Shown here: positions 25,761-64,000 of the stretch, piece by piece | Layout of the letters: every line of letters begins with the position of its first letter | How positions within the stretch are numbered: position 1 is the stretch's first letter | Assembly: GCF_037042905.1 (NCBI RefSeq) | Contig: NC_087258.1 | Coordinates: 25,854,001 to 25,918,000 of the forward strand | Reading direction: 5' to 3' | DNA from: Lytechinus pictus | Taxonomy: Eukaryota | Length of the DNA stretch: 64,000 bases | Translations under genes and position numbers: made by a program | Notes under the pieces: generated by a model | What the model was told of the DNA's origin: nothing | The model's input: only the letters and a program-made list of their open reading frames with translations | Database searches by the model: none

Positions 25761-26624
25761 CATAGGCGGATCCAGCTTTTTGCGAAAGGGGGGGGGGGGG
25801 CGCACTGCGGAGCGGCGCACAAATTTTTGCACTTCACCGGCGCCATAAAAGAATAAGGTGTATATATATATATATATATATATACATATCTATATGACTC
25901 ATGAGATAGAGACACATATCTCACCAACAAATTAATGCGAGCGCGAAGCGCGAGCTGAAATTTTTATAGTATACTGACCTGAAAAAAGGAAAAAAAGGTG
26001 TCTGTTTAGGGCTGTTTGTAGTAACTCATGAGGATACATATCTCACTACACAGATAATGCGAGTGCCGAGGGCGAGCTAAAATTTCTTTATATTCTGACC
26101 AGAAAGGTTTATATTCTAAGCATTTTGGTACCAATGATTAAGATGGGTATCTAAAAAAAACAATAGATGCGAGCGCGAAGCGCGAGCTTAAAATTTTGAT
26201 ATTTCGATCTGAAAAAATGACAGTTTAATGGACGTTTTTAATAGAGAACAAGATTATATCCAACAAAAGATTATTGCAAATCGAAGCGGGAGTTCTTCTG
26301 ATTAGAACTGAAAACGGGACATTCTATTCACATATATTTTATGATGAAAAGTATGGGGTTTTGCTACAGAAATGATGTGAGCGCGAAGCGCGAGCTAAAA
26401 ACTTTTATATTCCAATCTTAAAAGCGGACAATTTGCATGATTTTAAATAAAGAACGAGTTGTGTAGCTCGATCTCACTTGCTGATTTCTGTGTAACATTA
26501 CCATCTTATTTTATTTTTGCACATGCGGAACTATTGGGGGAGGGCAAAACGATATGTTTGCCCCCCAAACCCAATATTTTCATTGGTGGGGCGATCGCCC
26601 CTGTCCCCCGGATCGACGCCACTG
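25761..26624. mobile_element. Non-autonomous hAT-like element with periodic GCGAGCGCGAAGCGCGAGC motifs
   Basis: Termini CATAGGCGGATCC ... GGATCGACGCCACTG. The internal motif recurs about every 110-125 bp. TSD is not clean. Confidence 0.65.
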
Positions 26625-40810: not shown

Positions 40811-43800
40811 ATTCTCTGTGGAGGACGATTCGAAATTGTGACGTCATATGCATAACGTCTACTGTCAGATTATGGTCGGGTCAGAAAATTCAAGATCATA
40901 GATTAGAGAACTCTATTATCATGAAAGTGGATTTATTGATTACCTTTTAATATCGAAATGTATAACACTTGCAGAATGATACAAAATCCCCCTACAAAGC
41001 CGAATTTCGTGCGCTAAAATCGATTTTGAAATTGAATAGTTTTTCCCCCTAATAATTTTGTCATCGCTAACAGTTTTATTGCTATTGTTTTATGCCAAAG
41101 GGAAAAGGAGTATGTTACACAATCTCTATTTCCTGAAATAAACGTTCTTACGAGAATCTTTATAAGAGCATAGTTCCCATGAAAAAAATGAAATCAATCA
41201 TCAAAATATTGCAAGTATGAGACCCGACAGTTTGTCAGGGACGATCATTGACACATATTGACAGTTGAAAGCCTTTAGAAACAACAAATATGAGGTGCGT
41301 TGAGTTCTATATATTATTTCATTGTAAAGTGTACCACTAAAATGTGCCAGGTTATGGTGAATTTGGTTGTCATGGTTACCGTCTTCATATAGAATATATA
41401 TTTGTTGTCAGTATCTCTCTTGACAACTTTATCAAAATTTATTGAGGCATAATTATAATCAAATATGACTTCAAACATTACCCATACAAGCGTTCTTTCA
41501 TATCACATAAAAATAATTTTAACATACAATCTGTATCATTGCTATAATGCTCATAAAAATACATTATTATACTTAATATTTACATAGTCTTATGTAAAAT
41601 TATGTAAAAAACACATGGCTGTAGTCACCATGGTTAACATGGTTAGTGTGATGTATTATTTTTCTTTAAATTTTACCGATTGAGAATTCTTTCAGAAGTG
41701 ATCACTGATAATAAGAAAGAAATTATTATGTACTTCTTGAACGCACAGTGGACCGTCATGGCACTTGGCCAAGCAAAAGTTTTAAGTACTTTCTTCTCCC
41801 TAAAAATTACGAACGTGCAATACAAATATATTTGGTCGTTTTGTAATGTAACATTTCATAAGACTCTTTGTAGAAAGATTTAAATGGAATAAAACTCAAG
41901 AAATCAAATGCAACTTGATTTACGGTTACAGCCCGATAGACCGCGGGTCCGATAGACCGCGGGTCCGATAGTCCGCGGGTCCGATAGTCCGCGGGTCCGA
42001 TAGACCGCGGGTCCGATAGACCGCGGGTCCGATAGACCGCGGGTCCGATAGTCCGCGGTGTGTGTAAAATTATGATCAGGATATAGTGAGATCCAATGCC
42101 ATCAAGAGGTCAAAAGGCCAATGATACGAGTCCATGGGGTTCTATAACGATGACCCTAAGGACAATCGCCCCCTGACATCTACTTCAAGGAAAATATTAT
42201 CCCCATATTTTTATCGTCAGGGACTGTTACCCCCCCCCCCCCCACCGGAAATTTACCCTCTATAGACGCCATACGGAGCCTCTAAAATGCCATCGACTTG
42301 ACGACATGGCGAGATACTTTATCTTGCCATGTCGACTAAATAAGCTTATTATGTCCGCATGGCGCGATACGTTATTCTGCCACTTATAAAAAGTAATATG
42401 TCAACATGGCGAGATATTTTTATTACATTTTTATTACAAAAATACAAGGTTGTGGTAGATTTTGACATAATATTTGGAAAATAATATTATATTTCATCCT
42501 AATCCCTTTCCTTTTCTCTCTATTTTTTCTAAGTCTTGATTCTCTCTCTCTTTTTTTTTTTTTTTTTGGGGGGGGGGGGCAAAACGCCCATGTCCTAACA
42601 GTCATTTCCTAGCTTTACTTTATAAGCAATATAAATGTGTAATAATCTTTTAAGCCCTATGTTATCTAAAAATGAAATTTCATGTATTTTGTCCTGAAAA
42701 TTGAACATTTTGGGCAATGTTTGTGAACCTGAACAGGACGCGTATGTAACTAGATAATTACCACGAGCGCGAAGCGCGAGCAGAAATGTTAAATATTCGT
42801 TCTGGCCTGGTCAAATAGGGTCCTGTTAAGGATGTTTTGCAGTTAGCCATTAAGACGATACATATTTTAACGATTAAATAATGCAAGCGCGAAGCGCGAG
42901 CTGAACATTTTTTGATATTCCAACCTAAAAAGATGAGATTTCAAATCCCCCAATGGGACATTCGATTCATGTTTGTCAATCATGAAAAAGGATGGGTAAT
43001 TTTTGGTATCTTCCTACAATAATAATGCGAGCGCAAAGCACGAGCAGAAAATTTTTGATATTCTGATTCCATACTGGATAATTTTAGCACGTTTTGAATA
43101 AGATCAAGCTTTGTATCTCAAAAACATGCGCGCGCGTGTTTTAGAGTTAGACAGAATCCTGGCAATCTGAATACATTTCATTTTCCATCATAAAAATCAA
43201 TAATGAAAGCGCAGAGCCCGAGCTGAAAATAATATTTGAAATTCCGATATGAAAAGGGTCAATTTAAGCACTGTTTACAGCACTGTGTATATAGGGAAAT
43301 TTGATAGCACTATATAAATAATGTGAACGCGAAGCGCGAGCTGATATTTTATTATTTATTTGACCTAGGATCGAGACATTTTAGGCCTAAGGACATTTTG
43401 TCATCATGAATGGTGACTATCTTCTATTTCTTTTCCTAAAACTTGTTGATATTCATTTCTGAAAAAGGGACAATTATGAATTCATACAAATTTTATTTCA
43501 TATTTATTAATCTGTTAAGCCTAATGAGTGTGTGAAATTTGTTGACAGTTCATGAGGCCTGAAAACTAGATATTTTAAGTATTTTTGTAATCATGAATAG
43601 GATTCATTGATTGATATATTTTTAGCAAATAATGCGAGCGCAAATTGCGATCCGGATTTTTTTTTTAAATAGAATTAATATATAGGTATACATAACTCAC
43701 CAATCAAAATGCGAGCGCACAGCGCTAGCTCATAGGCCTTTATTATTTTTTTTTTACAATCGAGACACCTGAAAAGGTATATTTAGAGAATCTTATATGA

Positions 43801-45206
43801 ACTACAAAAAGACAATAGGTAGGCCTACTTGGCAAATAGTGCGAGCGCACAAAATGTTGATTCAAACCATAAAACGGACATTTTCCAGAGCACTTAAAAA
43901 CATAAATTGGTAAATAAAACAAAATAATGAAAGATCGATGTCCGAGCTGAATTATGTTTTGTATATTGATATCAAAACTTGATATTTTAAACTACATATC
44001 AGCCTATTGAGCAAGATATGTATCTCATCGAACAGGCAATGCAAGCGCGATGCGCGGGCGAAACTTTAATATAGTGACATTAAATATTTAAAAAAAATTG
44101 TTTTCCAAGTCTTCTCCTGACCTTATTTTATTCACTCGTCTTCCTCCTTTTATGTTTCGTCTTCTTTTTTCCCCTTTCTTTCCCCCTTTTTTTCTTTCCC
44201 CGTTTTTCACAATTTATTTGCTCTGTCAATAGGGGGGAGTGTGCCCTCGGGCGGCCTCGATCCGCCTATGTTAGTAGTTGTTATGATGAACACGATGCAT
44301 ATCTATTAAGAAATGAATGCGACCGCGAAGCGCTAGATGAAAACTTTTATAATGATGAAATGAAAAATACATTTTCAGTTGTCAGGTTAGAATATCAAAT
44401 ATTTTCAGCTTGTGCTGCTCGTTCGCATAAAAAAACCCTGTAAGGTCGGGATGCGTATATGACTAAACAATTTATTGATGCCAGCGCGAAGCGCGAGCTC
44501 AATTTTGTATATACTGACTTTAATAGGAAGGACTAAGGTATAGTTCCTATTCTAATTGCTTGTCCTTTTTCTCTTCCTTTTTTCTGTTTCATACCCCCTT
44601 TTTTGCGTCACCATGGGGGGGGGGGGCAAAATCTTTGCCCCTTGGATCGGCCTATGTATGTTGACTTGAAAACCACTAACACTTACATGTGGGATTGAAG
44701 CAGAGGATGCATAACTCATTAATCAAATATTGCGAGCGCGTAGCGCGAGCTGAATTTGATAATAACCCTTTTTTGTTACCCTGAACAGGGTATCTATCTC
44801 GCTAAACAGACTTAAAACTCGAAAACATTGTTTTTTCTGTTATCGTAAAAACGGGATATTTTAATTCAGCCGCATTAATTTAAGTTTTTTGGGCAGGACA
44901 TATATTTTACTATAAACAGGCAATACGAGCAATGTTGCGCCCCCGGTCGAAAATGAATTTGCATGAAGCCCTCTAAGTTCAAGGTCAATTTGGCGCCCCC
45001 GGTTGAACATAAACTTGGCGGCCCCATGTGAAAAATAACTTTGCCCTCCCTCCCCCTCTCTAAAACATGTATTTGTCGCATTATGGTCAAAATTCAAATT
45101 AGCGCTCCCCTAGTTCGAACATCAATTCGGTGCCCCGCTAGATCGAACATCAATTCGGCGCCCCATAGTTCGAACGTCATTTTGGCGCCATCAAATCGAC
45201 GTCCAG

Positions 45207-45363
45207 GGGAGCGTTTCATGAAAGGACTTGTCGGACGTTTTATCCGACAAGTCCCCTTTTATCCGACAGTTACCATAGAAACAGTGACTCTCAGCCAATC
45301 AAAATTAAGGAAAGATATCAGATCTGACAACTTGTCGGACAAAAATGTTGATGAAACGCTCCC
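45207..45363. mobile_element. Harbinger-like MITE nested in foldback copy 1
   Basis: CAG|GGGAGCGTTTCAT ... ATGAAACGCTCCC|CAG (3-bp TSD). Confidence 0.85.
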
Positions 45364-45384
45364 CAGGTCAACATCTCCCTCTTC

Positions 45385-45537
45385 NNNNNNNNNNNNNNNN
45401 NNNNNNNNNNNNNNNNNNNNNNNNNNNNNNNNNNNNNNNNNNNNNNNNNNNNNNNNNNNNNNNNNNNNNNNNNNNNNNNNNNNNNNNNNNNNNNNNNNNN
45501 NNNNNNNNNNNNNNNNNNNNNNNNNNNNNNNNNNNNN
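45385..45537. other. Assembly gap (153 N)
   Basis: Run of N. Confidence 1.
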
Positions 45538-46225
45538 CCCCTTTTCTTCTCCTTTTCTGTCTTTTCTTTTCCTCTTTTTAATCTCTCTTTTCTCGTTTTC
45601 CTCTCTTCCCCCCTTACTCTCTCTTTTTTTCTTCTCTTTTCCTCTCTTCCTCTCTCTCTCTCTTCTCTTATCTTTCTTCCCATCTTCCTCTCTCTTTAAA
45701 TATTATTCTCTTCCTTCCTCTTTTTTTTTCTTCTTTTCCCCCTTTTCGTTATTCTTTTCTTTTCTTTCTTTTCCCTCTTCCACTTTTTTCTCTTTTCCCC
45801 TTTACTTCTCCCTTTCTTTTTCTTTCCTTTCCCCCTTTTTTCTCTTTTAATTTTTTTTCTTCTCTCCCTCTTTCTTCTCTTCTTTTCCCCTCTTCCTCTC
45901 TCTCTCTCTCTCTTTTTTCTTATCTTTCTTCCCATCTTCCTCTATTTAAATATTCTTCTCTTCCTTCCTCTTTTTTTTTCTTCTTTTTCCTCCTTTTCCT
46001 TTCTCCTTTCTTTTCTTCTCTTCTTTTCCCTCCTCTTTTTTCCTCTTCTTTCCCCTGTTTTTTATCCCTTTTTTTCTTGTCTTTCCTTTCCCCTTTTTCT
46101 TCTCTTCTTCTCTTACTTTCTCCTTCTTACTCTCTTTTCTATTCTCTTCTTTTCCCATCTTCCTCTCTCTTTTTTTATTCTCTCTCTTTTCCCCTCTTCC
46201 CCCCTCTTCCCCCCTCTTTTTTTGA
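45538..46225. repeat. Polypyrimidine low-complexity tract with ~250-bp internal duplication
   Basis: Almost pure C/T. TATCTTTCTTCCCATCTTCC...TTTAAATATT occurs near 45670 and 45920. Confidence 0.9.
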
Positions 46226-46855
46226 GCTGGGGGTGGGGGGGGGGGGGTGAGGCTGTTCCCCCTCGGCCCCCCATGGATCTGCACCTGATAGAACCCCATG
46301 GCCTCGTATCATTTGACCTTTGGACCTCTCGATGACATTTGATATATCTGATCATAATTTTACACACACTGCGGACTATCGGACCCGCGGTCTATCGGAC
46401 CCGCGGACTATCGGACCTGCGGTCTATAGGACCCGCGGTCTAACGGACCCGCGGTCTATCGGACCCGCGGTCTATCGGACCCGCGGTCTAACGGACCCGC
46501 GGTCTATCGGACCCGCGGTCTATCGGGATGTCCCCTGATTTACAACCAATCAGAAGCTCATATTTGTACCTATTTTGAAATTATAAAAAAAAAAATTGCG
46601 TTCAAATGCAACGGGCCGAAGATCTTACAAACAAAAAAACACAAACAAGAACTATTACTGAATATTATGTCTTGGCACATAAGTTCTTATAAATTATTCT
46701 AATCGTTTGTCCAGGCATTTGTTAGTTCTTAAGAATAATGTTAAAAAAAAACTTTCTCCTCTGCCAATATCAGATAGACAGCCTGTCTTCTACTGCTTGC
46801 AATACTTCACAGTATCCATGTTATCTTACGTATGATGCTGGGGGCTTGTAGCAAT

Positions 46856-47278
46856 GGTTTATTTCATATTCGTCTAATGCCAATTCGTCCAATTGCCAAC
46901 TCGTCTACTACCATTTGGTCCATCATCAGTTCGTCTACTCACCACATAGTCTACTTTCATTTTGTCTAATGCCATTCCGTCTAATAACCAGTTGGTCCAA
47001 TTGCCATTTGGTCCATATACCATTTGTTTAATAATTAAAGTAAAGTGTTAATTGTGCAAAATGAATGAAAAGAAAATGGGTATTAGACCAACTGGTTATT
47101 AGACGAAATGGTAATAGACGAAATGGAGACTAGACTAAGTGATGATTGGACCAAAATGGTTATTAGACCAAATGGTTGTTAGACGAAATGTTGGTGGACG
47201 GAATGGCATTAGACTAAATGAAGGTAGGTCATGTGGTGAGTGGACGAGTTGGTAGTGGACGAATTGGCAATTTACTCA
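46856..47278. mobile_element. Small foldback-type element of inverted ~16-17-bp tandem repeats
   Basis: Left half repeats CATT(T/C)GTC(T/C)A; right half repeats T(A/G)GAC(G/C)AAATGG. Confidence 0.75.
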
Positions 47279-47744
47279 TTTCAATGTGTGGATGAGAGTA
47301 GCTGGCCAAATACGTCGTCTCCTTGCACAAAGTACCATTCTCTATCGATCACATCATCAGCTGGCGAATATCCAACTTCTTCAATTTAAGCCCTGACTCC
47401 ATACGTTGGCAGAATGCTTAAACCCTCTGTGCCTGAATCAATGATTGGTGCGTACAGATTCTCATATCATTTCCGAAGTATTTACACTCGGGACTATATC
47501 TACCAGCTATTGCGGTTACTGCTTCCAACAGTTGTTAGCTTCTTGGAGGTTGTCCATCCTTCCATCAGAGTGTTCGAACCCCATGTATGTTAAAAAAATG
47601 TTGAAATCCACGGAGAGTTATGCTTAATTGAGGGATTACTTTTTCAAGGGTCCAAATTCCAGAATCGAATTCTCAAATAAATTCAACGTCACAGAAAAAA
47701 AAACACAGTAACAAAAGAAAGTGATGTCATTTGAAGCATTTACA

Positions 47745-48767
47745 TTATTTTGTGGTATCTGAGCAGTATATTCTGAGCTTTTTCTTAAAGACATCTTTGG
47801 CTGTCTCCCGGAACATCTTATTTGTGATCAGGTACACTAGGCAATGCCACCACGTTGCAGACATGGAAAGGAACACAACCACACTTCCAAAGACTGGAGG
47901 AAAATTAACACCAACGCCTAACAAGACATAGAAGATGGTGAGAGGTAACCAAGAGACAAAGACAACAACGTTTAGGAGAAAGATGGTCAAAAGTGCCCTT
48001 CTGTTGCTCTTACGCTGTCTCCTAGTCGTTGCCGTTTCCTCTCTAGCATAAGCTGAGGTGTCATCGCGGTACTTGCGCTGATTAACCGTGCTAACCGTTG
48101 CAGTCATCGTGATTTCCCCATCTGCTATCGCCCTCGATTGTTTTCGGGAAATGACCAGCAAGCTCACTGTTGAAACGACTGATGTGAAAGCCGCCATCAG
48201 CAAGAAGGAAACGCAGAAAATCAAGACGAAATTGCCTTTGAGTGCATCCACATTAAATTCACATATGTTCATCATGAAGTCTCCTGAAGGTGTCTTGGGT
48301 ATAGGCAATCCCACAATGGTCAGACGAATGGATGAAGTTATGGCCACGGACATGACTACAACGGCCCTTCGATCAGTAACTATATGATGATACCGAAGGG
48401 GTTTTGCAACCATTATATATCGGTTCAGATTAAGAAGACAGGTAAGCGTTAATGTCACAAAGAAGCAAGGACAAATCAATACACCTTGGTAGATGCAGAT
48501 GGTAAATCTGGCATTGGCAGACATGGGGACAATCTGGAGGAGTGATGTAATCGCCTGACCAATCCCGTAGGCTGCATACCATACAGTCAGTGCTTTGAGA
48601 AACATTTTGGTTACAACGTCGAAACCACTTGTTGAATAGCGGAGAATGCCGTATGTAAAGGCGTTTGCAAGGACAGACAAAGGAAGTTGTGATACATTAA
48701 GGTAAAACGGCGTGGAATACGTTTCAAGGTATTCAGAGCTAGAATTAGAAGACGCCATCGTGCTCAT
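47745..48767 (-). CDS. Orphan class-A GPCR, paralog 3; single-exon CDS
   Basis: Seven TM segments, N-glycosylation sequon NSS, NRYIMVAKPLRY, SWLP, WWHCLVY and NKMFRE. First ATG at 48767; 48758 has better Kozak context. Confidence 0.88.
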   Translation of the reverse strand: MSTMASSNSSSEYLETYSTPFYLNVSQLPLSVLANAFTYGILRYSTSGFDVVTKMFLKALTVWYAAYGIGQAITSLLQIVPMSANARFTICIYQGVLICPCFFVTLTLTCLLNLNRYIMVAKPLRYHHIVTDRRAVVVMSVAITSSIRLTIVGLPIPKTPSGDFMMNICEFNVDALKGNFVLIFCVSFLLMAAFTSVVSTVSLLVISRKQSRAIADGEITMTATVSTVNQRKYRDDTSAYAREETATTRRQRKSNRRALLTIFLLNVVVFVSWLPLTIFYVLLGVGVNFPPVFGSVVVFLSMSATWWHCLVYLITNKMFRETAKDVFKKKLRIYCSDTTK

Positions 48768-51700
48768 ACTCAAACCTTCAACTGAGATATCCAAGAGCCG
48801 AACTTCATACAAATTACCACCATTGGTAACTGATTAAGTAAAGGGAGTGCCGTCGATAATGTTGCTTACGCTATTGGCAAAAAAAAAATCATGATAATTT
48901 GACAGAATGATGACTTCACAGAATTGCGAAATGAACTTGTGGCACCGGATATTCTCAAGGCATCTGTAAGCATAAGATGTTAATGATGAAAGGCACAATA
49001 AAAGGCGGTTCAATCGCTTCATGGCTTTGCCTTGACACAAAGTGGTTAATGGGTCAGGCGACTCACATGTCCACTATCTCTCGCTGACAAATATTGGTTC
49101 TTTTATAATACACGTTAAAATATGTAGGTCAGCGTATCAGATTACTGAGATGGTGACAATGAAATGACAATCATGCTCTCTTCATTTTGAAAAAAAATAC
49201 GCATTGAATTGAGTACTTATCGAAATTGCAATTAATCTATAGCAAATCGGATTCTTATCTGGTTCTGAAAAAAAGTGTGAAAGGTAGTGAAAACCCGTAT
49301 AAAGGTTTGAAAATCTACCTGAGCATCTCAGATGATCAAGAAGCATATTTCTTTTAGTGCTTGAGAATATGACTGTAATTTTGTTTTCAACGCTATTGTA
49401 AAAACATTTTGGACAAAATATCAGTTTATTGTTTTTATAGTATATGAACCCACTTCTTAAGATGAATGGGCTGTAATTATGTGTAACTTTTGAGTATCCA
49501 ATTACTTTCTTTAAGAGGCATATGCTTAAAGTGTTATTTGTAACATAAAAATTACTGATTACTGAGAGACGTTGCTAGATATGTCAAAATTTCAAATTTG
49601 AATTTAAAAGGTTGACAGAATATTCCATGGCCAAGACAATTTTGTAAGATTAGAATATTTGATGATACCTGAGTATGACGGACATTAACGACTCTATACA
49701 AAAGCTTTAGATTGGCTTTTAAAAAATTATATTAAACATATGACTGATGTATGAAGTAGAAACCAACCACTGAAAAAAGATTTGTTGGCTTCCGATAATT
49801 CTGAAAAAGAACTTGTCAGGTCTTTCCTAATTAAAAAAGTGCAGTCAGCACTTGGTTCGTGCTCAAATAATTGCTTATCTATGCTTTAAACCTTTACCGA
49901 TTTAAATTATTAATTAATATTGGAAGGAATAATATTTCGTGTATAGACATCATCTTCGAGCACGGGCAATGAAAACTTTTGTGTTCTGAATTTAGTGGCA
50001 CGCGACACTCAGTAACTGTAAAAAAATATGATATTGCAATTAAAAATGAGTCTTCTGATTGTATGGTTATTATTTCTTTTCACGTTACAAATAGATAGTT
50101 GATAACCTATAGAAAGGTGGATATCTGTCAAGCCTAAATGATCATGTTTTCCCTTTTTTTTAATTCCGGCTGGGTCTTTTTGCGGGTTTGAATACTTCTT
50201 AGGATAAATGAAGAACACCCCCACACTTTGACTTTGAACTCTTTTCGATAAATAGAATACATGAACAAAAGAAAAAAACAAGACACCTGCCATTAGCTCA
50301 ATTTTAATATGCAAAAATAATATTTAACACATTCAATACCTATCGTTCATGTTGTTGATTTTTCGAAGAGGAATTCGGTCTTCGTAGTATCATAACTTGT
50401 GAGAAGGGAGAAAAAATAAGAAAAAACATAACGGCGAAATCCTTAGAGAAATAGTACAAGGAATATTCAAGTTTGTGTGTGATTAAAGATTCAACTAATT
50501 GTGAATCTGGAACAGAAAATTTGGTAAGTAGATCTCCAGCTCTTTTGTACTTTTTTTTTTTCAATAAGAAACAAAGAATCACAATAACGCATGTGGGTGC
50601 TAAACAATACATACATAATAAATAAAGAGGCTTTAATAGGAGGTAATAATAATTTGTGAAAAAAATGTCGGCATTACTCCTATGTGTTTAAGATTGCATG
50701 CTCGATCTGTAATGAAAATCATAAGTCAGGAAAAAATTGGAACCAGTGGGATCCCACAAAAGATGCACAGTTTTTATGACCTTGTCAAATGCAACTATTA
50801 AGTTAAACATTGAAAAAAAATGATTCTTATAAATTAAGGATAAAATTAAGGATTGTCTGTACCACTGAATCCTATATTGAATTATATTACTCGATAATAA
50901 TAGTGTTCAGTGGTGCTTTATATCCTAAAAGGTTCCATGATATTGTGGTAGGGTGAGGGAGAAAGACGACTTAAAGATGACGTCATTTTTTGGTTAATTC
51001 ATTTTTGAAGGGTCCTGGGAAGCTAGGGTGCTGAAGCACTCAAAAAAATTTCCTTGGGGGTGCTGCATGTGTCATTCTCCATCCCCGGGCATCCCGGGAG
51101 ATTTGTAAAAATTTAACCGAAATGGCCTTCATTTTGAAGTGAACCTCCCCTTTTTTATTATTATTTTTTTTTTATTTGCTCTTCAAATCTCTTGGGAGCA
51201 ATTTGATTCTCCATTTTGTAGTGGAAACCTTTATCATTATTTCTTTGCTTTTCAAATTTACATCAACTCCAACAGTAGAAATCCTTTCCATAGCCCTGTT
51301 ATTCTTTCTTCATTCTTTTTTCCCCTTTTTATTCACCTCCACCTTATCCCCTTATTCACTTCAACAATCGGGGGGGGGGGGGCACCGTTTTAAATTAAAG
51401 AATTGTGTATAGATTCGAACTTTTCAGTATTCTTTAAGGAATCATACGCTTTGAGAAAAATAAACTCACAAACTGAATTCATAGAAAATTCGGATAACCG
51501 GATAACCAATTCGGGCAACAATTCCTTACTTCGTATGAACTGATGTAAATTCTTCTCATTTACCCAGTCGTGGTCAAGGTAAGTAATAAAAAACAAACAA
51601 AAAAAAAACCCTGGAATTTATTATGATTATTGGACAAGGAATCCAGGTGGTTTGAATGCGGAATCAAGAAAGCCACCTTCATGGGAAATAGTGGAAAGCC

Positions 51701-54339
51701 CATCCTTCAACAAAAAAGAAGGCCTCCAGTCCAGGATAGGCCCCATAGAAAATTGACCTAACCTTGTTTTTTCATATATACAATAATTTTTTTATGGTTT
51801 CTTGTCATTTCGAGGTTGCTGATTACGAATCTGAATGATTTCACTCGTGTAACCTTAAGCATATTCAGCAAATTGGTAAAATACAATATGGCCGCCAAAA
51901 TATGCAAATTACCCATGAAAATCATAAAATTTCCCGCACATTGGTTATAAAATGTATGTATATGTGTTGCAGGAGTGAAATACTCTCTGAAAAAATAAAT
52001 TTTGACAAAAATTATTTTTAGATATTCAAAATGGCCGCAATAGACCCCTGTATTTTATATTATCTACAATATTAATGGGGGAAAACTAAATTTCACAAAA
52101 GTGAGCACTAAATGCGAGTAAGTGTGATTTTTAGTGAAATAATGGATGAAAACATGATTGCTAACGAAATGTATCTTTTGTTATGTCATGTATGTAATAA
52201 ATGACGCATTTTACTGTTCAAAAAGCCACCAAATGCCCTGACAGTTTATGGGGGGAAAAAAATCACAAGGGTGAGTGCTTAAATGCATATTACTAGTATT
52301 AAGATAAGCGAATGGAATACTGGCTAAAAACATAATTTTTACGAAATATAAATGCAATTTATGTGATAAATGCTGTATTTTGACATTCAAAATGGCCGCC
52401 ATAGGCCCATTATACATTATGTACAATGCGATTGGAGAAATTAATTTTCACACGAGTGAGAACTATAAAATGCATGTAATTTTGATCACCGAGTAAAATA
52501 ATGTCTGAAATACTCAGTCTGAAAACATGTTTTCTAGCAAAACATGTCATTTCTTTTGTAATGCATGAGATAAATGCTGTATTGTGAAATTCAAAATGGC
52601 CCCTTTAGGCCCTAACAGTATTATCTACAATGTAAATTGTGACATATAATTTTGTAAGAATTTGGATTTACTTGACTATGAAATCCCTTAAGCCCTGTTG
52701 TATGATAAAACATTAGTTGAAAACATGATTATTATGAGATATAGCATTTCTTCTGCCATGTAAGTGATAAATACTGTATTATGACATTCAAAATAACTGA
52801 TACAAGCCCCAACTAAATTATATTACATGCGTATAGGGAATCTACTTTTTACAAGAGTGAGAATCATAAAATGCATGTAGCTGTGATGTATGAGTAAAAA
52901 TATTGTCTTAAACATGATTTCTAAATAAGTACATCACATATTGGTCATGGTGGTAACAAATGTTGTACTTTGAAATTCAAAATGGCTGCCATAGGTCCTA
53001 AAAGTACTATTATGTACATTGTAATTTGGGACATATAATTGTGACAGAATTTGGCTTTGCTTGACTAAAGTATTGCATGTAATTGTGATGTAAGAGTGAA
53101 ATATTGTCTACAACCATGCTTCCTAACGAGCTATATCATATCGGTTACAGCCCGATAGTCCGTGGGTCCGTTAGTCCGCGGGTCCGTTAGTCCGCGGGTT
53201 CGATAGACCGCGGGTCCGATAGTCCGCGGTGTGTGTAAAATTATGGTGATATCCAATGTGATCAACAGGTCAAAAGGCCAATGATACGAGTCGATGGGGT
53301 TCTATAACGATGCCCCAAAGGACAATTAATTGCCCCCTGACAACTACTTCAAGGAAAATATTATCCCCATATTTTTATCGTCGGGGACTGTTACCCCCCT
53401 CCCGAAAATTTACCCTCGAGACGCCAGTTATCCCTAGTACGGAGCCTTTAAAATGCAATCGACTTGACGACATGGTGAGATACTTTATCTTGCCATGTCG
53501 ACTAAATAGGTTTATTATGTCCGCATGGCGAGATCCTTAATCCTACCAAGTACACTTATAAAAACTTTTATGTCAACATGGCGAGATATTTTATCTTGCC
53601 AAGTCAACTTGTAACAAGTTATAGGTCAAAATGGCGATATATCGGGATTCACGCCGGTGTAGCAAGTTTTTATGCCCGTGCGGTGAAAACGCCTGCAAAT
53701 GCGAAGGACAAAAAACCTGATGTTGTTCAGGCATTTCCGTCCGCCCGGACGTAAAAAACGTTTTGCCCACTGAAAAGGTCCGTGTTTTCCGGAGATTACG
53801 CCCGCATATTTTTTCAGCGACTGGAGTACAGGCTACGATTTTTTCGGCGACTGGATCGCAAGCTACGATTTTTTAGGGTGTCTGAATCACAGGCTATCTG
53901 ACAATGGTGTCCGTAGGATTGGAGCTATGATTTTCCTCATTTCTTTCTCTGTCATCTCCATCCTAGGTTTTACTTGGATACTAGTAGGCCTATATAACAT
54001 ATTTTCAGTAAAAGCCCTGGTTTTAAATTGTGAGGCACACCTACTCGACTTTAAATCCTAGTAGATATCCTATAAAAAAGACATAAAAAAGATAAAGAAA
54101 AAAGAAAGGAAAAAGAAATAAATACTGTATTTGAATTTTACTCTATTCATTTACTTTTTTTCAAAGAAAACAAACGTTAATAATATAATATTTATGTTGG
54201 CGAAAATAGTCAAATTTGACTGGTTGCCAAATAAAAATAAGAACCCCCCGTGACAATGGTGTCATCACAATAACAATCGTGTCATAACATGCATAGCCTT
54301 CAAATAATTAAGAACACAATTTGTGTGTGCAGTGTATAT

Positions 54340-54830
54340 TTCAAAGGAGATCCCTTAAGAAAAATTTGTTGTAAAATAGCTGAAAGAATAATACAAAATA
54401 TTAGTGAAGGTTTGAGGAAAAACTTTAAGTTATTAGGATTTTAAGTTTCGGATTTTGACGTCATAAACGAGCAGTTGGACTATTATGTTATGTATTAGAA
54501 AATGCACTGAAATTTTAATTTTTTGATGGCTCGTAATAAGTTATTTTTTCTTTTCGTTTTAGGAAAGGGTGTAAAATAATTTGTCTATTGATGTACTGGT
54601 GATACAATAAAACCGGTTTCAATTTTCTGAGAATATGACATTTCATTTATTTCTTACCATTCGATTATGCAGGAAAGCTCCTCACATATGACGTCACAAA
54701 TCAAATAATAAAAATTATAATAACTTTTTTCCTTTGATGGAATTTTTCTTAGACCTTTGACAATATTGTTTTATTATTTTTTTTTTGCTATTTTTACATC
54801 AACTTTTGTCAGGGTGAACTTCCCTATTTA
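54340..54830. mobile_element. Kolobok-like non-autonomous element (related to 62757-63090)
   Basis: AAAGG...GAACTTCCCT ends. Shares GAAGGTTT, GCGAGCAG-like and AATGTCAT/ATGACATT blocks with 62757-63090. Confidence 0.5.
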
Positions 54831-57401
54831 TGGTGTGGTTGCTATCCCATATTATTTACAAGATTGCTATTATTTTACTGAGTAAAATTTTACCCAATAT
54901 TGAGTAAAAAGGGAACATGCATGTTTGCTGGGTATTTTTTACCCCATATTGGGCTATTTCAACGCAACATTGTGTAAAATTTACCAAATATTGGGTATCT
55001 TTTTACCCAACCAACATGCATGTTCCCAGTTCCCATTTTACCTAATATTGGGTAAACTTTTTTTTAGAGTGTATGTATAACAAATTATAAACCTCTCTTT
55101 AAGAATGTCGAATAATCCGTTCCTCTGATTGGTCGAAATTGAGGTCATGTAATCAACCATGCCTGAAAAACAACAAACTAAGGTGGTTACCAAGGGCAAC
55201 GGGCATAGTTAACAAGATTTCTGCCCGTGGCCCCCTGATACGCCCCTTAACGACGGGCATGGCAAAATTTGGCTGAGATCTCCATTTGATTGCGTGCAAA
55301 ATGTTGTTTCCTGCGGTGATTGCGGGTACCATAAATATCCGCGCGATTTGATCGAAAGTTTTAGACAATTCGCACATTTACGCGCTTATTGCGCAAGTGC
55401 GCGCAACGGATATGACATATCGATGGAACGATGCTGATCTCTGAGTTTTGCTTGTTTATTCCTGTTTAAAAAATATGGCATTAATGAAAAGAAGATTAAC
55501 TTATTAAGGACATAACGGATGTATCAATCATCAAGTTTTGCTGCAGCTGTTCATTCAAAATCAAATGCATGCTCGCAAAAGGTGAGTCGGCTGAAAAGAT
55601 AAGACGGTCATTGCACTTTATAGCCAGGTATGACAAACGACAACGTTAAGCTAGGTTGGGGCGTAAGGTCTAACGTTAGGCCTACGTTAGCTTAGAACCG
55701 GCTCAGAAGTTAGACTCTTAGAGTAGACTCTGTTAGATCTCACTAAGTTAGACCTAATGTTAATCGTAGATCTGACGTAGATCTAAAGTTAGACTCTATT
55801 GCAGATTTATTTTAAGACGTAGGCTTACTGTAGAATCTAGATCTATTTGAGACCCTTATTTGGTTCCTAAAATATCTAGGCCTACCGCCATTCTACGGAC
55901 TGCTTTGATATTCGACTTCGAGACCTAACGTCAGAGCTGAGTTAGGGCCTAACATTAAGTAACAACATGTTGGGCCTAACGTTAGCATGGGCTAGGGCTT
56001 TAGTTTTAGGCTTAACTGGTTTAAGATCTAGCCTAGACCTAGACTAGATCTAACGTTTAATTCGGTTCATAAAATATATATGGACTGCTTTTATATTCCA
56101 GACATGGTTGTTTCTTTCGGCTCGCGGGTACTGCACCGGCCAGACCATGCCCTCGGGCATAGTAGCGTTGCAGTCCCCTTGAGCCTCTAGAAACAACCAT
56201 GCCTCTCAAAGCAGTCCATATATCTATACTATGAAATTGCACCCCCTTAAAAGAATTACGTCCCACTCGACCGATTAAGAATACTCCACCCCCTTACTCA
56301 CAAAAGAAAGGAATTCGTGTCTACGCCCGTAAATTGTAAGGTTAGGTTATTAGGAATTCATGACAATTTTATTATCATATAATTAATGTAATAAGCCTAA
56401 TGAGTTAGTGAAATTTGTTGAAATTTGAGGTCGTAAAACTGGATATTTAAGCACTTTTTTAATTAGGAATAGGATTTATGAGTTGATATGTTTTTAACTA
56501 TCTATGCGAGCGCAAATCGCGAGACGATTTTTTTTTAAACTGTCATTAAAGGGGGATTTTAAGTAGTTTGTTACAGAATTAATACATAAAGAATCTTATA
56601 GAATAAACAAAGACAATATGTATAGGCATTCTTGGTAAATCATTAAATGCGAGCACACAGCGCAAAAAGCTGCAAATGATATTCACACCATTATACGGGC
56701 ATTTTACATAGCACTTAAAGAAAAATAAATTTGTAAATCAAACAAAATAATAAAAGCTCGATGTCCGAGCTGAAATATGTTTTATATATTGACTTCATAA
56801 CTTGATATTTTGAGCCTAATACATATCAGCCTATTGAGCAAGATATGCATCTCATCAAACAGGCTATGCGTGCGCGAAGCGCGAGCGAAAATTTAATAAA
56901 GTGACATGAAATATATATCTTAAATCATTTTCCAAGTCTTCCCCTGACCTTATTTTATTAATTCGTCTCCCTCCTCCTATTTTTCCTCTTCTTTTTTTCT
57001 CCTTTCTTTCCCCTTCATTTTCTTTTTTTCTTTGTTTCTCCCTTTTTTTGCTCCGCCAGTAGGGACCTCGCCCCCTGGATCCGCCTATGTATAACATCCA
57101 GCTGAGTTACAGTACATCACTGTTTTTTTTAGACAGTTCGAAGTTCTAAAAACGTGATTTTGGGGGCAAATAGTAAAATGTTTGCCTGATAATGAGTGAT
57201 CTCATTATGACCTTTAAATATGCAACTGTTTGTTGTGTATGTAAAGCATAATTCTCAAGGATCCCCAAAACGGCTGAATCATCCTAACACTAGCACCACA
57301 TTCATAAATATACATGAGGATCGCCTTCTTGCCTGATAATAAATTTACCCCTAACTCCCCTAAAGTAACCACCTAACCCTATTGGGGGTATAATTTTCCT
57401 G

Positions 57402-57584
57402 GTGGGTGTTTCATAAAGCTGTTCGTAAGTTAAGAGCGACTTTAAGAACGACTGGTGAACCTTTCTTACGCGCTAAATAATCACTAATGAACATAATGGT
57501 GAACCGTCACTTACCACAAGAAAAGGATCACCAGTCGTTCTTAAAGTCGCTCTTAACTTACGATCAGCTTTATGAAACGGCCTC
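57402..57584. mobile_element. Harbinger-like palindromic MITE
   Basis: About 60-bp TIRs GTTTCATAAAGCTG.TCGTAAGTTAAGAGCGACTTTAAGAACGACTGGTGA, CTG/CAG flanks. Confidence 0.85.
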
Positions 57585-58117
57585 CAGGTACGCCAATACG
57601 CGGTCCAATATACGGAGAGGCTGACAGGCTGTGCAAAACATGAAGCCTTATGTGTTATGACGACTTTAAAACAAAGACTACGCATGGAGAAAACGTCCGC
57701 CCCTCGGTGGAGAATTCGTCCACTCAGCACGGTCTTTTTGCCCGCGGACAAAAACCCCTGAAATACTCTAGGATTTTTCATCCGCGCAGACGGATTAAAC
57801 TGGTCGGACGTTTTCGCCTCCGACACCGGGACTTGTACACTTCATACCTCGCCATGTCGACATATCGACTTGACAAGATAGAATATATCCCCATGTCGAA
57901 TTAATATATTAATCATGTTAATTAGACATGGCAAGAAAAAGTATCACGCTATGTCGTCATGTCGATGGCATTTTCAAGGCTCCGTAATAGGGGTAATTGT
58001 CTGGAGGGTAAATTTCCGGGGGGTAACAGTCCCCGGCGGTAATAATATGGGGATAATATTTTCCTTGAAGTAGTTGTCAGGGGGTGATTGCCCTGATTTG
58101 GTTATTGTTATGGAACC

Positions 58118-60138
58118 CAGGCGTGGATCCAGGATTTCGTGGGGAGGGGGCCCAAATTTGACTTGATTTTTGGCGCCCATGTGTACTTTTCGAAAAATGG
58201 CGCCCACACCCTCCCGGCCAGGCTAACTGAAGTGCCTTGAATGGATTTTGAATTATCTTATAAGCACATTAAAAAAAAGGCAATTAAAGGCCAATTTTTT
58301 AATGTTTTCTTGAAGAAAATCCATGAATATATAATGCAATATCAATGGGAGCGCGAAGCGCGAGCGAATTTGGGGGGGGGGGGGGGTTTCAATTTGGTTT
58401 AACTTCTCACCAGAGTAGGCCCTAGTAGAATATTGTGTGGACGGGAGCTGTAGTTCCTTTACTGTTTTTAGAATAGCCTTTAATGATATTAATGATAACC
58501 TCTTGGGAATAATGCAACCTCGAAGCAATCGACTCATTCTCCTCATCAGTGGCGTATTTATTCAGCATGGGTGCATGGGGGGGGGGGGGGCTTGTTGAAC
58601 TTTTGTACAGGGCACCAAGATAAATGAAATGGGGGGGGGGGGGAGAAGTTCAAGAAAATCTGAGATTTTATTCTTAAAAACACATTGAGGTTTCTCACAA
58701 AGCCTAAATAAAAAATGAGAACGCGAAGCGCGATCTGATTTTTTTAAAATTTTCATTTATTTTATCCTGAAAGCCTAAGTCAAGGGCGGACCCAGCTTCC
58801 GCCAATAGGGAGGGGGGGGGGTCAATTTTTTCACCCATATTTCCCCGCTTGGCCGCTCAAAGTTGATTTTGTTTTTGTTTCTTTGAAGGGGTTGTCCCAG
58901 TGGTGTAATGAGCCAACAAATTTGAGGGGGCTCGATATGGCGTATCGCATAAAATTAATAAGAAGTTGCCAGTGAACGAAGTGAGCAAGCATATATGCTG
59001 ACATTTTTATTACAAAAATACAAGGTTGTGATAGATTTTGACATAATATTTCGAAAATAATATTATATTTCATCCTAATCCCTTTTCCTTTTTTTCTTGC
59101 TCGTGATTCTTTTTTTTTTTTTTTTGGGGGGGGGACGCCCATGTCCTAACAGTCATTTCCTAGCTTTACTTTATAAACAACATAAATGTGTAATAATCTC
59201 ATAAGTCCTATGCAAGCTAAAAAAATGAAATTTCATGTATTTAGTCCTGTAAATTGAACATTCTGGGCAATGTTTTTAAACCTGAACAGGACGCGTATGT
59301 AACTAGATAATTACCAAGCGCGGGCAGAAATGTTAAATATGCGTTCTGGCCTGGTCGAAAGGGACCTGTTAAGTACGTTTTGCAGTTAGCCATTACGACG
59401 ATGCATATATCAACGATTAAATAATGTGAGCGCGAAGCGCAAGCAGAACATTTTTGATATTCCAATCTAAAAAGATGAGATTTCAAACCCCCCAACGGGA
59501 CACTCGATTCATGTTTTGTCAATCATGAAAAAGGATGGGTAATTTTTGGTATCTTCCTACATTAATAATGCGAGCGCAAAGCGCAAGCAGAAATTTTTTG
59601 ATATTCTGATCTGAAACTGGATAATTTTAGCACGTTTGTAATCAGATCAAGCTGCTTATCTAAAAAAACATGCGTGCGCGTGCCTTAGAGATAGACAGAA
59701 TCTGGGCATTTTGAATACAATTCATTTTTCATCATGAAAATCAATAGCAGAGCGCGAGCTGATTTTTTCATGGGGACACAATATCAAATGTCCCCCCATG
59801 TTTTTGTCACAAAAGAAGTGTGACCTTCTGGGGGGGGGGGGGATATGTGCATACCTTCTCAAGGAAATGAGAGTTGATTCCCCTTAAAAATATAAAGAAA
59901 AAAAAACATTTGCCATGTAACTTTTCGATGCAATTAACGGTGGGTAAATTCGCATTCAAAAGCAGCACAGCTAGCCCTCTTTTTTCTCTTGTTTTTTTTT
60001 TTTCTTCTCTTCCTTTCTCCCTCTTCCTCTCTCTTTTTTAATTCTCTCCCTTTCCCCCTCTTTCCATCTCTTTTTTTGAGCTGGGGGGGGGGGGGGGTTG
60101 AGGCAAGGCCCCCTCGCCCCCCTATGGATCCGCACCTG
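58118..60138. mobile_element. hAT-like composite element inserted into the right arm of foldback copy 2
   Basis: Termini CAGGCGTGGATCC / GGATCCGCACCTG. 8-bp flanks ATGGAACC / ATAAAACC (ATAGAACC in copy 1 and in the intact left arm). Confidence 0.75.
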
Positions 60139-61222
60139 ATAAAACCCCATGGTCTCGTATCATTTGACCTTTGGACCTCTCGATGACATTTGATAAATCT
60201 GATCATAATTTTACACACACTGCGGACTATCGGACCCGCGGACTAACGGACCCGCGGACTATCGGACCTACGGACTAACGGACCCGCAGACTATCGGACC
60301 CGCAGACTATCGGACCTGCGGACTAACGGACCCGCGGACTATCGGACCCGCGGACTATCGGGATGCCCCCATCATATCTGGTGCATTTATGGTGATAAAT
60401 GCAGCATTCTGAAATGGAAAATGGCCGCTATGGGCCCTTATTGTATTATGTACAAGTTGAACGAGGACAGATAATTTTCACAAAAGGGCATAAAATTATG
60501 TCGACCATTTTGAATTTTGAAATATAACATTTATCACCTAAATTTTAGATGATATATTTCGTTAGTAATCATGTTTTCAGACAATATTTCACTCATACAA
60601 CACCATTTAGTCAGGCAAAGCCAAAATATGTTAAAATCATTTGTCCCCATTCACATTGTACATAATACTATTGGGGCCTGTAGCGGCCATTTTGACTTTT
60701 AAAATACAGTATTTATCACCTACCTGGCAGAAGAACTGATAAATCTTGTTAGAAATTATGCTTTCAGACAATATTTTACCCAAAGATCACAATTACGTGC
60801 ATTTATGGTGCTCACTCATGTGAAAAATTATTTCCTAGTGCGCATTGTACATAATACAATCAATGTCTATGGCGGCCATTTTGAAAGTCAAAATACAGTA
60901 TTAAACACAAACTTTAAACCTGAATGATATATTTAAAAAACCGTTAAAAACCGTGTGTCTTAGACAGTATCCCATTTATTCATCACAAATAAATGTATTT
61001 CAGTCCTCACTCTTGTGATTTCTTTGGTCCTCTCTCATTGTACATAATACTTTTAGGGCCTTTGGCGGCCATTTTGAATATCAAAATACAGCATTTATCA
61101 CATACATGGCATATTGAATAATATATTTCGTTTTAGTCAATATTCTACTCGTTTCTCTATTGTGCATTTTAATGTTGGGCAACATACTGCCCACTGTGTT
61201 AGGTATATATATTGGTAATATA

Positions 61223-63193: not shown

Positions 63194-64000
63194 TTAATTT
63201 GTGGTATTTGAGCAGTATATTCTGAGTGTTTTCTTAAAGACATCTTTGGCTGTCTCCCGGAACATCCTATTTGTGATAAGGTAAACGAGGCAATGCCACC
63301 ACGATGTAGACATAGACAGAAACATATACACACTTCCAAAGACTGGAGGAAGATTGACACCTACGCCTAACAAGACAAAGAAGATGGCGAGAGGTAACCA
63401 AGAGAAAAAGACGACAACGTTCAGGAAAAAGATGGTCAAAAGTGCTCTTCTGTTGCTCTTACGCTGTCTCCTAGTCGCTGCCATTTCCTCTCCAGCATAA
63501 GCTGAGGTGTCGTTGCGGTCCTTGCGCTGATTAACCGTGCTAACCGCTGCAGTCACCGCGATCTCCCCATCTGCAATCGCCTTCGATTGCTTTCGGGCAA
63601 TGACCAGCAAGCTCGATGTTGTAACGATTGACGTGAACATCGCCATAAGCAAGAAGAAAACGCAGAAAATCAGGACGAAATCGCCTTTGAGTGCATCCAT
63701 ATTTGATTTACAGAAGTTCATCATGAAGTCTCCAGAAGGTGTCTTGGGTATAGGCAATCCCACAATGGCCAGAAGAATCGAGGAAGTTATGGCCAAGGAC
63801 ATGACTACAACGGCCCTTCGATCAGTAACTATGTGATGGTACCGAAGGGGTTTTGCAACCATTATATATCGGTTCAGATTAAGAAGACAGGTAACAGTTA
63901 ATGTCACGAAGAACCAAGGAAAAGTCAACACACCTTGGTAGACGCAGATGGCAAATCTGGCATTGGCAGACATGGGAACAATCTGGAGGAGTGATGTAAT
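63194..64000 (-). CDS. Orphan class-A GPCR, paralog 4 (N-terminus outside window)
   Basis: Close paralog of 47745-48767. Frame is open to the window end (ITSLLQIVPMSANAR). NRY, SWLP and WWHCLVY present. Confidence 0.88.
   Translation of the reverse strand: MTSLLQIVPMSANARFAICVYQGVLTFPWFFVTLTVTCLLNLNRYIMVAKPLRYHHIVTDRRAVVVMSLAITSSILLAIVGLPIPKTPSGDFMMNFCKSNMDALKGDFVLIFCVFFLLMAMFTSIVTTSSLLVIARKQSKAIADGEIAVTAAVSTVNQRKDRNDTSAYAGEEMAATRRQRKSNRRALLTIFFLNVVVFFSWLPLAIFFVLLGVGVNLPPVFGSVYMFLSMSTSWWHCLVYLITNRMFRETAKDVFKKTLRIYCSNTTN

What the first reader, a model, noticed from the sequence alone, without database searches (positions are those of the whole stretch)
41916..60378. Two copies of a large foldback (TU-like) composite transposon with 17-bp tandem-repeat inverted arms and perfect 8-bp TSDs
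Seen: 41924-46535 and 53143-60370 share asymmetric GG termini (GGTTACAGCCCGATAG on the left, GGGG(A/G)CATCCCGATAG on the right read inward). They also share outer arrays of CCGCGGGTCCG(A/T)TAG(A/T) in variable copy number and a non-repetitive inner inverted domain. Each has its own perfect TSD (TGATTTAC; ATCATATC), so these are independent insertions. Neither encodes a transposase, and the interiors are stacks of other repeats. Knowledge: outer tandem domain + inner domain + 8-bp TSD is the architecture described for sea-urchin TU foldback elements; GG ends with 8-9-bp TSDs also fit Mutator/Merlin-type transposases. Inference: a recently active, possibly uncatalogued family that carries kilobases of heterogeneous cargo and hopped twice into one GPCR cluster.
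Basis: partly seen in the sequence, partly recalled or inferred. Interest (0 to 1): 0.75.

Follow-up and report, generated by a model that had tools for sequence, protein, structure and literature searches.

The report
Sea-urchin foldback transposon carrying a passenger
These are two separate insertions, one young and one old, of a protein-less "foldback" jumping gene present about 300 times in this sea-urchin genome; it is a well-documented new example of a long-known kind of element, not a new kind.

Summary
Elements at 41924-46535 and 53143-60370 have the stated asymmetric GG ends and perfect 8-bp duplications (TGATTTAC; ATCATATC). The tandem unit is 16 bp, not 17.

Genome-wide there are 269 exact left ends and 310 exact right ends, against 0 in reversed controls. 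The standard copy is about 6 kb, non-coding and collinear between copies. Of 20 copies examined, 14 have 8-bp and 2 have 9-bp duplications. Nearest copies on different chromosomes are 98-99.5% alike, so the family moved recently.

The 6-kb form is a composite. A true foldback of about 1-1.4 kb (arms about 515 bp in copy 2) took a 4.75-kb non-coding passenger into its right arm. The passenger has CAGG ends and its own 8-bp duplication, ATAGAACC. The pair then amplified as one unit.

- Copy 1 is a young internal-deletion derivative.
- Copy 2 is old (about 86% identity) and has a private 4.2-kb stack of other repeats in its centre.

No transposase was found. None of the MULE, Merlin, P or hAT hits that could be checked against the listed ends lies in or beside a copy. 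GG ends with 8/9-bp duplications fit Merlin best, then Mutator.

An earlier scan note had already described the passenger junction. The read-based tests (empty sites, gap spanning) could not be run.

The parts
41916..41923 (.). Copy 1, left target-site duplication TGATTTAC
   Evidence: Read directly. Identical to 46536-46543.
41924..42057 (+). Copy 1, left terminal 16-mer GGTTACAGCCCGATAG followed by the 16-bp tandem array (134 bp, 8 units in all)
   Evidence: Period 16, 97% matches. Array length. The left end occurs 269 times genome-wide.
42058..42145 (+). Copy 1, non-repetitive part of the left arm that still pairs with the right outer arm
   Evidence: Alignment of the left arm with the reverse complement of the right arm ends at position 222.
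42146..42420 (+). Copy 1, remainder of the ancestral long left arm. Its partner in the right arm was lost in this copy's internal deletion.
   Evidence: Copy 1 positions 1-497 match positions 1-478 of the full-length copy L032. This stretch pairs with copy 2's inner right arm, 42159-42235 with 58018-58094, at 91%.
42421..42424 (.). Copy 1, junction of a private 1.6-kb internal deletion (positions 479-2083 of the full-length copy are missing), with a few letters of filler
42425..46287 (+). Copy 1, passenger element. Its left end is deleted and its right end ...GCACCTG is intact. It is non-coding. It includes the N gap at 45385-45537 and a C+T-rich low-complexity tract at 45538-46230.
   Evidence: 97.4% identical over 2,970 bp to L032, and collinear beyond the gap. 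Right end read.
46288..46369 (-). Copy 1, non-repetitive part of the right outer arm. It begins with ATAGAACC, the passenger's target duplication.
46370..46535 (-). Copy 1, right 16-bp array and right terminal 16-mer GGGGACATCCCGATAG read inward (166 bp, 10 units in all)
   Evidence: The right end occurs 310 times genome-wide.
46536..46543 (.). Copy 1, right target-site duplication TGATTTAC
53135..53142 (.). Copy 2, left target-site duplication ATCATATC
   Evidence: Identical to 60371-60378.
53143..53228 (+). Copy 2, left terminal 16-mer and array (86 bp, 5 units in all), with several CpG-to-TpG changes
53229..53657 (+). Copy 2, rest of the long left arm: a unique part, then roughly 53-bp repeats
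   Evidence: The arms align end to end, 433 pairs at 87.8%, once the two insertions are left out. 53-bp repeat.
53658..57825 (.). Copy 2, 4,168-bp private stack of other repeats at the centre of the foldback, flanked by CCGG on both sides. Non-coding.
   Evidence: No match in 20 other family copies except one 480-bp module. Its left part matches unrelated repeat families elsewhere in the genome. No Pfam match. No Rfam match.
57826..58117 (-). Copy 2, inner part of the right arm, ending in the first copy of the passenger's target duplication (ATGGAACC here)
   Evidence: (53425-53518 pairs with 57906-57999).
58118..60138 (+). Copy 2, passenger element, a 2,021-bp internally deleted version. Its ends are CAGGCGTGGATCC... 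and ...GGATCCGCACCTG.
   Evidence: Matches positions 958-2872 and 5761-6152 of the full-length copy at 83-85%. Junctions read.
60139..60220 (-). Copy 2, non-repetitive part of the right outer arm. It begins with the second copy of the passenger duplication (ATAAAACC here).
60221..60370 (-). Copy 2, right array and terminal 16-mer GGGGGCATCCCGATAG read inward (150 bp, 9 units in all)
60371..60378 (.). Copy 2, right target-site duplication ATCATATC

Best explanation
Both stretches are copies of one non-autonomous, foldback-type cut-and-paste DNA transposon family of this sea urchin. Earlier scan notes name the species as Lytechinus pictus.

The ancestral element was an almost perfect palindrome of about 1-1.4 kb. 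Each arm runs, from outside in:
- a terminal 16-mer (GGTTACAG... on one side, GGGGACAT... on the other);
- 5-14 tandem 16-bp units, each ending CCGATAG;
- a unique stretch;
- roughly 53-bp repeats.

Before the family expanded, an unrelated 4.75-kb non-coding transposon landed in the right arm. It has CAGG ends and its own 8-bp duplication, ATAGAACC. The composite then spread to roughly 300 copies.

Copy 1 is a young copy that lost 1.6 kb internally. Copy 2 is an old copy with a shortened passenger, and other repeats later piled into its centre.

Inferred, not shown: a transposase supplied in trans binds the reiterated 16-bp units and the terminal 16-mers. It cuts at the GG ends and integrates with an 8-bp (sometimes 9-bp) stagger. 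The most likely enzyme type is Merlin (about 40%), then Mutator/Foldback (about 25%), hAT or P (about 15%), and something else (about 20%).
For: - **Sharp ends and unrelated flanks.** 29 of 30 fetched loci carry the left terminal 16-mer (one of them with one substitution), each with different flanking DNA.
- **End counts.** 269 left and 310 right exact ends, against 0 in reversed controls. Only these two end types exist among 532 ends that keep the first array unit.
- **Pairing and size.** 66 of 76 listed left ends pair with a right end. The commonest size is 5.9-6.2 kb.
- **Target duplications.** 12 of 20 are perfect 8-bp, 2 are 8-bp with one mismatch, and 2 are 9-bp.
- **Conserved interior.** Copies are collinear over about 6 kb at 90-97%.
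- **Recent movement.** Nearest neighbours on different chromosomes, each with its own duplication, are 98-99.5% alike.
- **No coding capacity.**
- **Passenger.** ATAGAACC flanks CAGGCGCGGATCC...GCACCTG exactly where the right arm stops matching the left arm. The same junction is present in copy 2 and in every full copy.
- **True foldback.** Copy 2's arms align end to end at 87.8% once the two insertions are left out.
- **Merlin signature.** Merlin elements are defined by terminal 5'-GG and 8- or 9-bp duplications (PMC8101967).
Against: - No copy with a transposase was found.
- Of the 17 MULE, 53 Merlin-type, 25 P-type and 62 hAT-type protein matches in the genome, none that lies on contigs C1-C5 is inside or beside a family copy (against the end lists). 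End positions were listed only for C1 to part of C7 (left ends) and C1 to C5 (right ends).
- An 8-bp duplication also fits hAT and P.
Confidence: 0.85

Rival explanations
1. The family is moved by a Mutator/Foldback (Phantom-type MULE) transposase, as Drosophila FB and nematode Tm1 elements are.
For: - Most foldback elements studied belong to Mutator (PMC4079207).
- Tm1 also has composite arms of variable length, two different terminal motifs and 8-10-bp duplications (PMC3169594).
- G-rich ends fit.
- Earlier scan notes report other Mutator-type foldbacks in this genome.
Against: - Duplications here are mostly 8 bp (14 of 16 readable ones), whereas Mutator/Foldback families give mostly 9 bp.
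- Only 17 MULE matches exist in the genome. None of those on contigs with listed ends lies near a copy.
Confidence: 0.25
2. The family is moved by a hAT- or P-type transposase, both of which make 8-bp duplications.
For: - The dominant duplication is 8 bp.
- The genome has 62 hAT-type and 25 P-type protein matches.
Against: - The ends GGTTACAG and GGGGACAT do not resemble the usual hAT (CAG/TAG...) or P (CATG...) ends (own knowledge).
- Two 9-bp duplications were seen.
- No hAT or P match lies in or beside a copy on the contigs checked.
Confidence: 0.12
3. One reading: a composite transposon in which two arm modules mobilise kilobases of heterogeneous, unrelated cargo.
For: - Copy 2's centre is indeed a stack of unrelated repeats.
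- Sizes range from 80 bp to 23 kb.
Against: - The interior of most copies is one and the same collinear 6-kb sequence.
- The passenger entered once, at one junction shared by all copies.
- Left and right ends differ and occur as L-R pairs, not as independent arm elements.
Confidence: 0.05
4. It is not mobile: the similarity reflects segmental duplication or an assembly artefact.
For: - Copy 1 contains an assembly gap.
- Four right ends on contig C1 at 17.5-17.7 Mb look like a local duplication.
Against: - Hundreds of copies lie on all large contigs with unrelated flanks and copy-specific duplications.
Confidence: 0.01

Closest known systems
TU elements of the sea urchin Strongylocentrotus purpuratus (Liebermann et al. 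1983 Nature 306:342; Hoffman-Liebermann et al. 1985 Mol Cell Biol 5:991). Cited from my own knowledge; neither paper was held in the library.
   Same: - The host is a sea urchin.
- The long inverted arms have an outer domain of short tandem repeats and an inner non-repetitive domain.
- The target duplication is 8 bp.
- There is no coding capacity.
- One class shares a common middle segment that suffers deletions and insertions.
- The middle segments contain sequences that also occur elsewhere in the genome.
   Different: - The species is different.
- No sequence comparison with TU1 was possible, so homology is untested.
- Here the "middle segment" resolves into a defined passenger transposon with its own ends and duplication, sitting inside the right arm.
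Merlin superfamily, non-autonomous members (Feschotte 2004, as summarised in PMC8101967)
   Same: Terminal 5'-GG, 8- or 9-bp target duplications, and inverted repeats of tens to hundreds of bp.
   Different: No DDE_Tnp_IS1595 transposase is linked to this family. The tandem-repeat arms are not a Merlin hallmark.
Foldback/Mutator elements: Drosophila FB, nematode Tm1 (PMC3169594), Drosophila virilis Tetris (PMC4079207)
   Same: - The arms are built from tandem repeats whose number varies.
- Most copies are protein-less.
- In Tm1 the two terminal motifs differ.
- Other transposons are nested inside copies.
   Different: Those families give mostly 9-bp duplications, and here 8 bp dominates. No MULE transposase is linked.

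Membership tests
Foldback-type DNA transposon (a structural class) | Long inverted arms that make up most of the element and contain tandem repeats | tested here: met
   16-bp arrays of 5-14 units. Arms of about 515 bp align end to end in copy 2 once the insertions are left out.
Foldback-type DNA transposon (a structural class) | Mobile: sharp ends, unrelated flanks, target-site duplications | tested here: met
TU elements (S. purpuratus) | Outer tandem domain plus inner unique domain in each arm, with an 8-bp duplication | tested here: met
   The definition comes from my own knowledge of the 1983 and 1985 papers.
TU elements (S. purpuratus) | Sequence homology of the arms to TU1 and its relatives | not testable with these tools
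   No TU sequence, Repbase or Dfam was available. The papers are not held.
Merlin | Terminal 5'-GG | tested here: met
   Both end types start with GG, in 532 of 532 ends that keep the first unit. Criterion from PMC8101967.
Merlin | 8- or 9-bp target duplication | tested here: met
   14 of 8 bp and 2 of 9 bp among 20 copies.
Merlin | DDE_Tnp_IS1595 transposase in an autonomous copy that shares the ends | tested here: inconclusive
   53 matches in the genome. None of those on contigs C1-C5 lies within or beside a copy. Their ends could not be read.
Mutator / Foldback (MULE) | Target duplication of mostly 9 bp (range 8-10) | tested here: inconclusive
   8 bp dominates. Two of 16 readable duplications are 9 bp.
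Mutator / Foldback (MULE) | MULE transposase linked to the ends | tested here: inconclusive
   17 matches. None of those on contigs with listed ends lies near a copy.
hAT | 8-bp duplication | tested here: met
hAT | Ends of the CAG/TAG type, and a hAT transposase linked to them | tested here: not met
   The ends are GGTTACAG and GGGGACAT. None of the 62 hAT matches lies in a copy on the contigs checked. The passenger inside the element, by contrast, has CAGG ends and an 8-bp duplication.

The most novel reading that the evidence does not exclude
The family is an orphan. It moved very recently (copies 99.5% alike on different chromosomes), yet no autonomous partner exists among the four detectable transposase types that make 8-9-bp duplications. 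It would then be driven by an undescribed transposase type, or by an enzyme that recognises only the reiterated 16-bp unit. If so, a passenger-laden 6-kb palindrome-ended element can be mobilised with no sequence kinship to its driver.
Probability: 0.12. Interest if true: 0.6.

Novelty: new member of a known kind. Interest (0 to 1): 0.3.

Why it matters
**Genome annotation.** About 300 copies of about 6 kb come to close to 2 Mb of one family. They can now be recognised by two 16-letter ends.

**Transposon biology.** The family is a clean case of a small foldback element that captured another transposon in one arm and then succeeded as a composite. It still has simple, countable ends and very young copies. 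That makes it a practical substrate for asking which enzyme moves foldback elements in echinoderms, a question open since the TU elements of the 1980s.

It does not change any concept.

Tried and rejected
**Looking for coding capacity**
1. ORF scans of 20 copies and both window copies found nothing real. The only long frames are translations of C+T-rich low complexity, or lie in flanking LINE-like DNA. Pfam was blank on the best pieces. Rfam was blank on both copies.

**Looking for an autonomous partner**
2. I paired listed left and right ends and compared them with the coordinates of all MULE, Merlin, P and hAT protein matches. No match lies in or beside a copy.
3. I looked for a third end type that might mark an autonomous relative. 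None exists: there are only the L and R types, plus one mutated L.

**Steps that were blocked**
I fetched no more letters and ran later genome searches with loci=0.
   - One local script compared the whole of copy 1 with loci already fetched, and another read the whole window file. Later scripts stopped copy 1 before the gap.
   - The eight runs found were in any case small, holding 0.04-0.20 of the sampled words.
6. The TU papers could not be read.

**Ideas tested and dropped**
7. Copy 2's 4.2-kb centre might have been the remains of a transposase gene or a shared older middle segment. I rejected this. It has no coding signal, and its parts match unrelated repeat families at loci outside the family.
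Full report
**What is in the sequence**

Copy 1 runs from 41924 to 46535 and copy 2 from 53143 to 60370. Both start with GGTTACAGCCCGATAG. Read inward from the right, they start with GGGGACATCCCGATAG (copy 1) or GGGGGCATCCCGATAG (copy 2). Each is flanked by a perfect 8-bp direct repeat: TGATTTAC for copy 1 and ATCATATC for copy 2.

The tandem unit behind each end has a period of 16 bp, not 17. The arrays hold 8 and 10 units in copy 1 and 5 and 9 in copy 2. The obvious inverted repeat is 222/248 bp in copy 1 and 163/232 bp in copy 2. Four intronless rhodopsin-type receptor frames confirm the "GPCR cluster".

**The assembly gap**

The two sides of 45385-45537 align to one full-length copy elsewhere, in the same order and on the same strand. 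The unaligned interval is 162 bp here against 163 bp there. The gap lies in a C+T-rich low-complexity tract, a typical place for an assembler to stop.

The identical 8-bp repeat at the two outer ends also argues that both sides belong to one insertion. A read-based check was not possible, as explained under Limits.

**The family genome-wide**

The window is C14:25854001-25918000 of an 812-Mb assembly. Earlier scan notes call the species the painted sea urchin, Lytechinus pictus.

- The left 16-mer occurs 269 times and the right one 310 times. The reversed controls give 0.
- Among 532 ends that keep the first array unit there are only these two end types, plus one mutated left end.
- Of 76 listed left ends, 66 pair with a right end on the opposite strand. 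Sizes peak at 5.9-6.2 kb. There is a tail of short forms (80, 850, 1,245 and 2,584 bp, and so on) and long forms (10-13 kb, one of 23 kb).
- Flanks differ at every locus.
- Among the 18 of 20 fetched copies in which a right end was found, plus the two window copies (20 in all), 12 have perfect 8-bp duplications. Two more are 8 bp with one mismatch. Two are 9 bp (TCCAATTTC, and CTATTGGAT against CTATTGGTT). One is ambiguous (5 of 8 positions match) and three have none.
- Arrays vary in whole units, from 5 to 14.

**Conserved interior and age**

Full copies are collinear over about 6 kb at 90-97% identity, with occasional deletions, insertions and internal duplications. Over 2.7 kb of interior, median pairwise identity is 96.1%. 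Nearest neighbours are 98-99.5% alike. For example, L044 on C2 and L050 on C8 are 99.5% alike and each has its own perfect duplication. So the family transposed very recently.

Copy 1 is 98.2% like its nearest relative. Copy 2 is only about 86-88% like any of them, and its arrays show CpG decay. The two insertions therefore differ greatly in age.

**The 6-kb form is a composite**

In a full-length copy the left arm pairs with the outer right arm only up to about 206 bp. The next about 200 bp of the left arm pair instead with a stretch about 1 kb from the left end.

At exactly that break the sequence reads ...ATAGAACC | CAGGCGCGGATCC ... GCACCTG | ATAGAACC.... This is a 4.75-kb insertion with short inverted CAGG ends and a perfect 8-bp duplication, sitting inside the right arm of an older foldback.

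- The same junction is present in every full copy examined and in copy 2, where the passenger is 58118-60138 (2,021 bp).
- Copy 1 keeps only the passenger's right end, at 46287, because a private 1.6-kb deletion removed the inner right arm and the passenger's left end.
- When the passenger and the central stack are left out, copy 2's arms align end to end: about 515 bp each, 433 aligned pairs at 87.8%, meeting at a CCGG.

The ancestral element was therefore a true foldback with almost no loop. An earlier scan note (s1-320198) had proposed the split right arm. I tested that here and it holds.

**What the passenger is**

It is non-coding. It contains 13 dispersed units with the core GCGAGCGCGAAGCGCGAGC. 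That 19-mer occurs 17,838 times in the genome, often in clusters, and also at 25937-26377 of this window outside any copy.

The passenger's left end (a 20-mer) occurs 363 times. Of 99 listed places, 60 lie inside family copies and 39 do not. So the passenger also exists, or existed, as a family of its own.

**Copy 2's centre**

The 4,168 bp at 53658-57825 have no counterpart in other copies, apart from one 480-bp module. They have no coding or RNA-family signal. Their left part matches two unrelated repeat families at loci outside this family.

**How it most likely works**

Shown:
- sharp ends;
- copy-specific 8- or 9-bp duplications;
- no coding capacity;
- recent spread of a composite unit.

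Inferred:
- The family is mobilised in trans by a DDE transposase that binds the terminal 16-mers and the reiterated 16-bp units. The units all end in CCGATAG, as the terminal 16-mers do.
- That enzyme cuts at the GG ends and integrates with an 8-bp stagger.

Terminal 5'-GG with 8- or 9-bp duplications is the published signature of Merlin (PMC8101967). Mutator/Foldback families give mostly 9 bp (PMC3169594). hAT and P give 8 bp but have other ends.

I put Merlin at about 40%, Mutator at about 25%, hAT or P at about 15% and other at about 20%.

No autonomous partner was found. The genome holds 17 MULE, 53 Merlin-type, 25 P-type and 62 hAT-type protein matches. None of those on contigs with listed ends lies inside or beside a copy.

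**Limits**

The long and short copies and the ends of candidate transposase loci could not be read, and I fetched no further letters.
Two local scripts did read files that contain them.
- The TU papers, Repbase and Dfam were not available. Kinship with the S. purpuratus TU elements, and the "uncatalogued" claim, remain untested.

**Verdict**

This is a real, abundant, recently active, protein-less foldback transposon family with a fixed passenger. It is a new member of a kind known since the 1980s. The scan had already met other foldback families in this genome, and the split right arm of this one.

Noticed in passing
window 46866-47275: A separate small foldback element of about 410 bp lies next to copy 1. 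Its two arms are inverted arrays of a different 16-bp unit (AAATGGTTATTAGACC on the right side), with about 64 bp between them. Its ends and duplication were not determined.
   Followed up: partly
window 52003-53142 and 60379-61132: Copy 2 sits inside a satellite of about 190-200-bp units (core ATTCAAAATGGCCGCCATAGGCCC). The satellite runs forward up to and just past the insertion, then flips to the inverted orientation at about 60500. This is another palindromic repeat structure around the foldback.
   Followed up: partly
window 25937, 26169, 26377; also 13 times inside the passenger: The 19-mer GCGAGCGCGAAGCGCGAGC occurs 17,838 times in the genome, often in clusters spaced about 105-115 or 210-235 bp apart. 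It is the core of a very abundant dispersed or tandem repeat of unknown nature.
   Followed up: partly
G000 C2:57655704-57655783: A left end and a right end lie only 80 bp apart. This is either a minimal element made of ends and a few array units, or the remnant of a near-total internal deletion. It was not read.
   Followed up: no
G000 C1:17512766-17686244: Four right ends in the same orientation each lie 4,229-4,244 bp from a passenger left end, with no left end of the family. This looks like a local segmental duplication carrying one truncated copy.
   Followed up: no
window 42415-42430: The junction of copy 1's 1.6-kb internal deletion carries a few letters of filler that repeat the adjacent TATTAC. 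This is the kind of scar left by interrupted repair after excision.
   Followed up: partly
window 45205-45365 and 57395-57575: Two small palindromic MITE-like inserts of about 160-180 bp with inverted ends. One lies inside the passenger of copy 1 and the other inside copy 2's central stack.
   Followed up: no
window 21512-22729 (+), 23931-25067 (+), 47745-48812 (-), 63194-63973 (-): Four intronless open frames match the rhodopsin-family 7TM receptor model, with E-values from 2e-11 to 5e-17. The receptor-gene cluster is real.
   Followed up: yes
G000 C3:5966636-5970247: Two Merlin-type transposase matches with 461-aa open frames lie on opposite strands about 3 kb apart. No end of the present family lies nearby.
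   Followed up: partly
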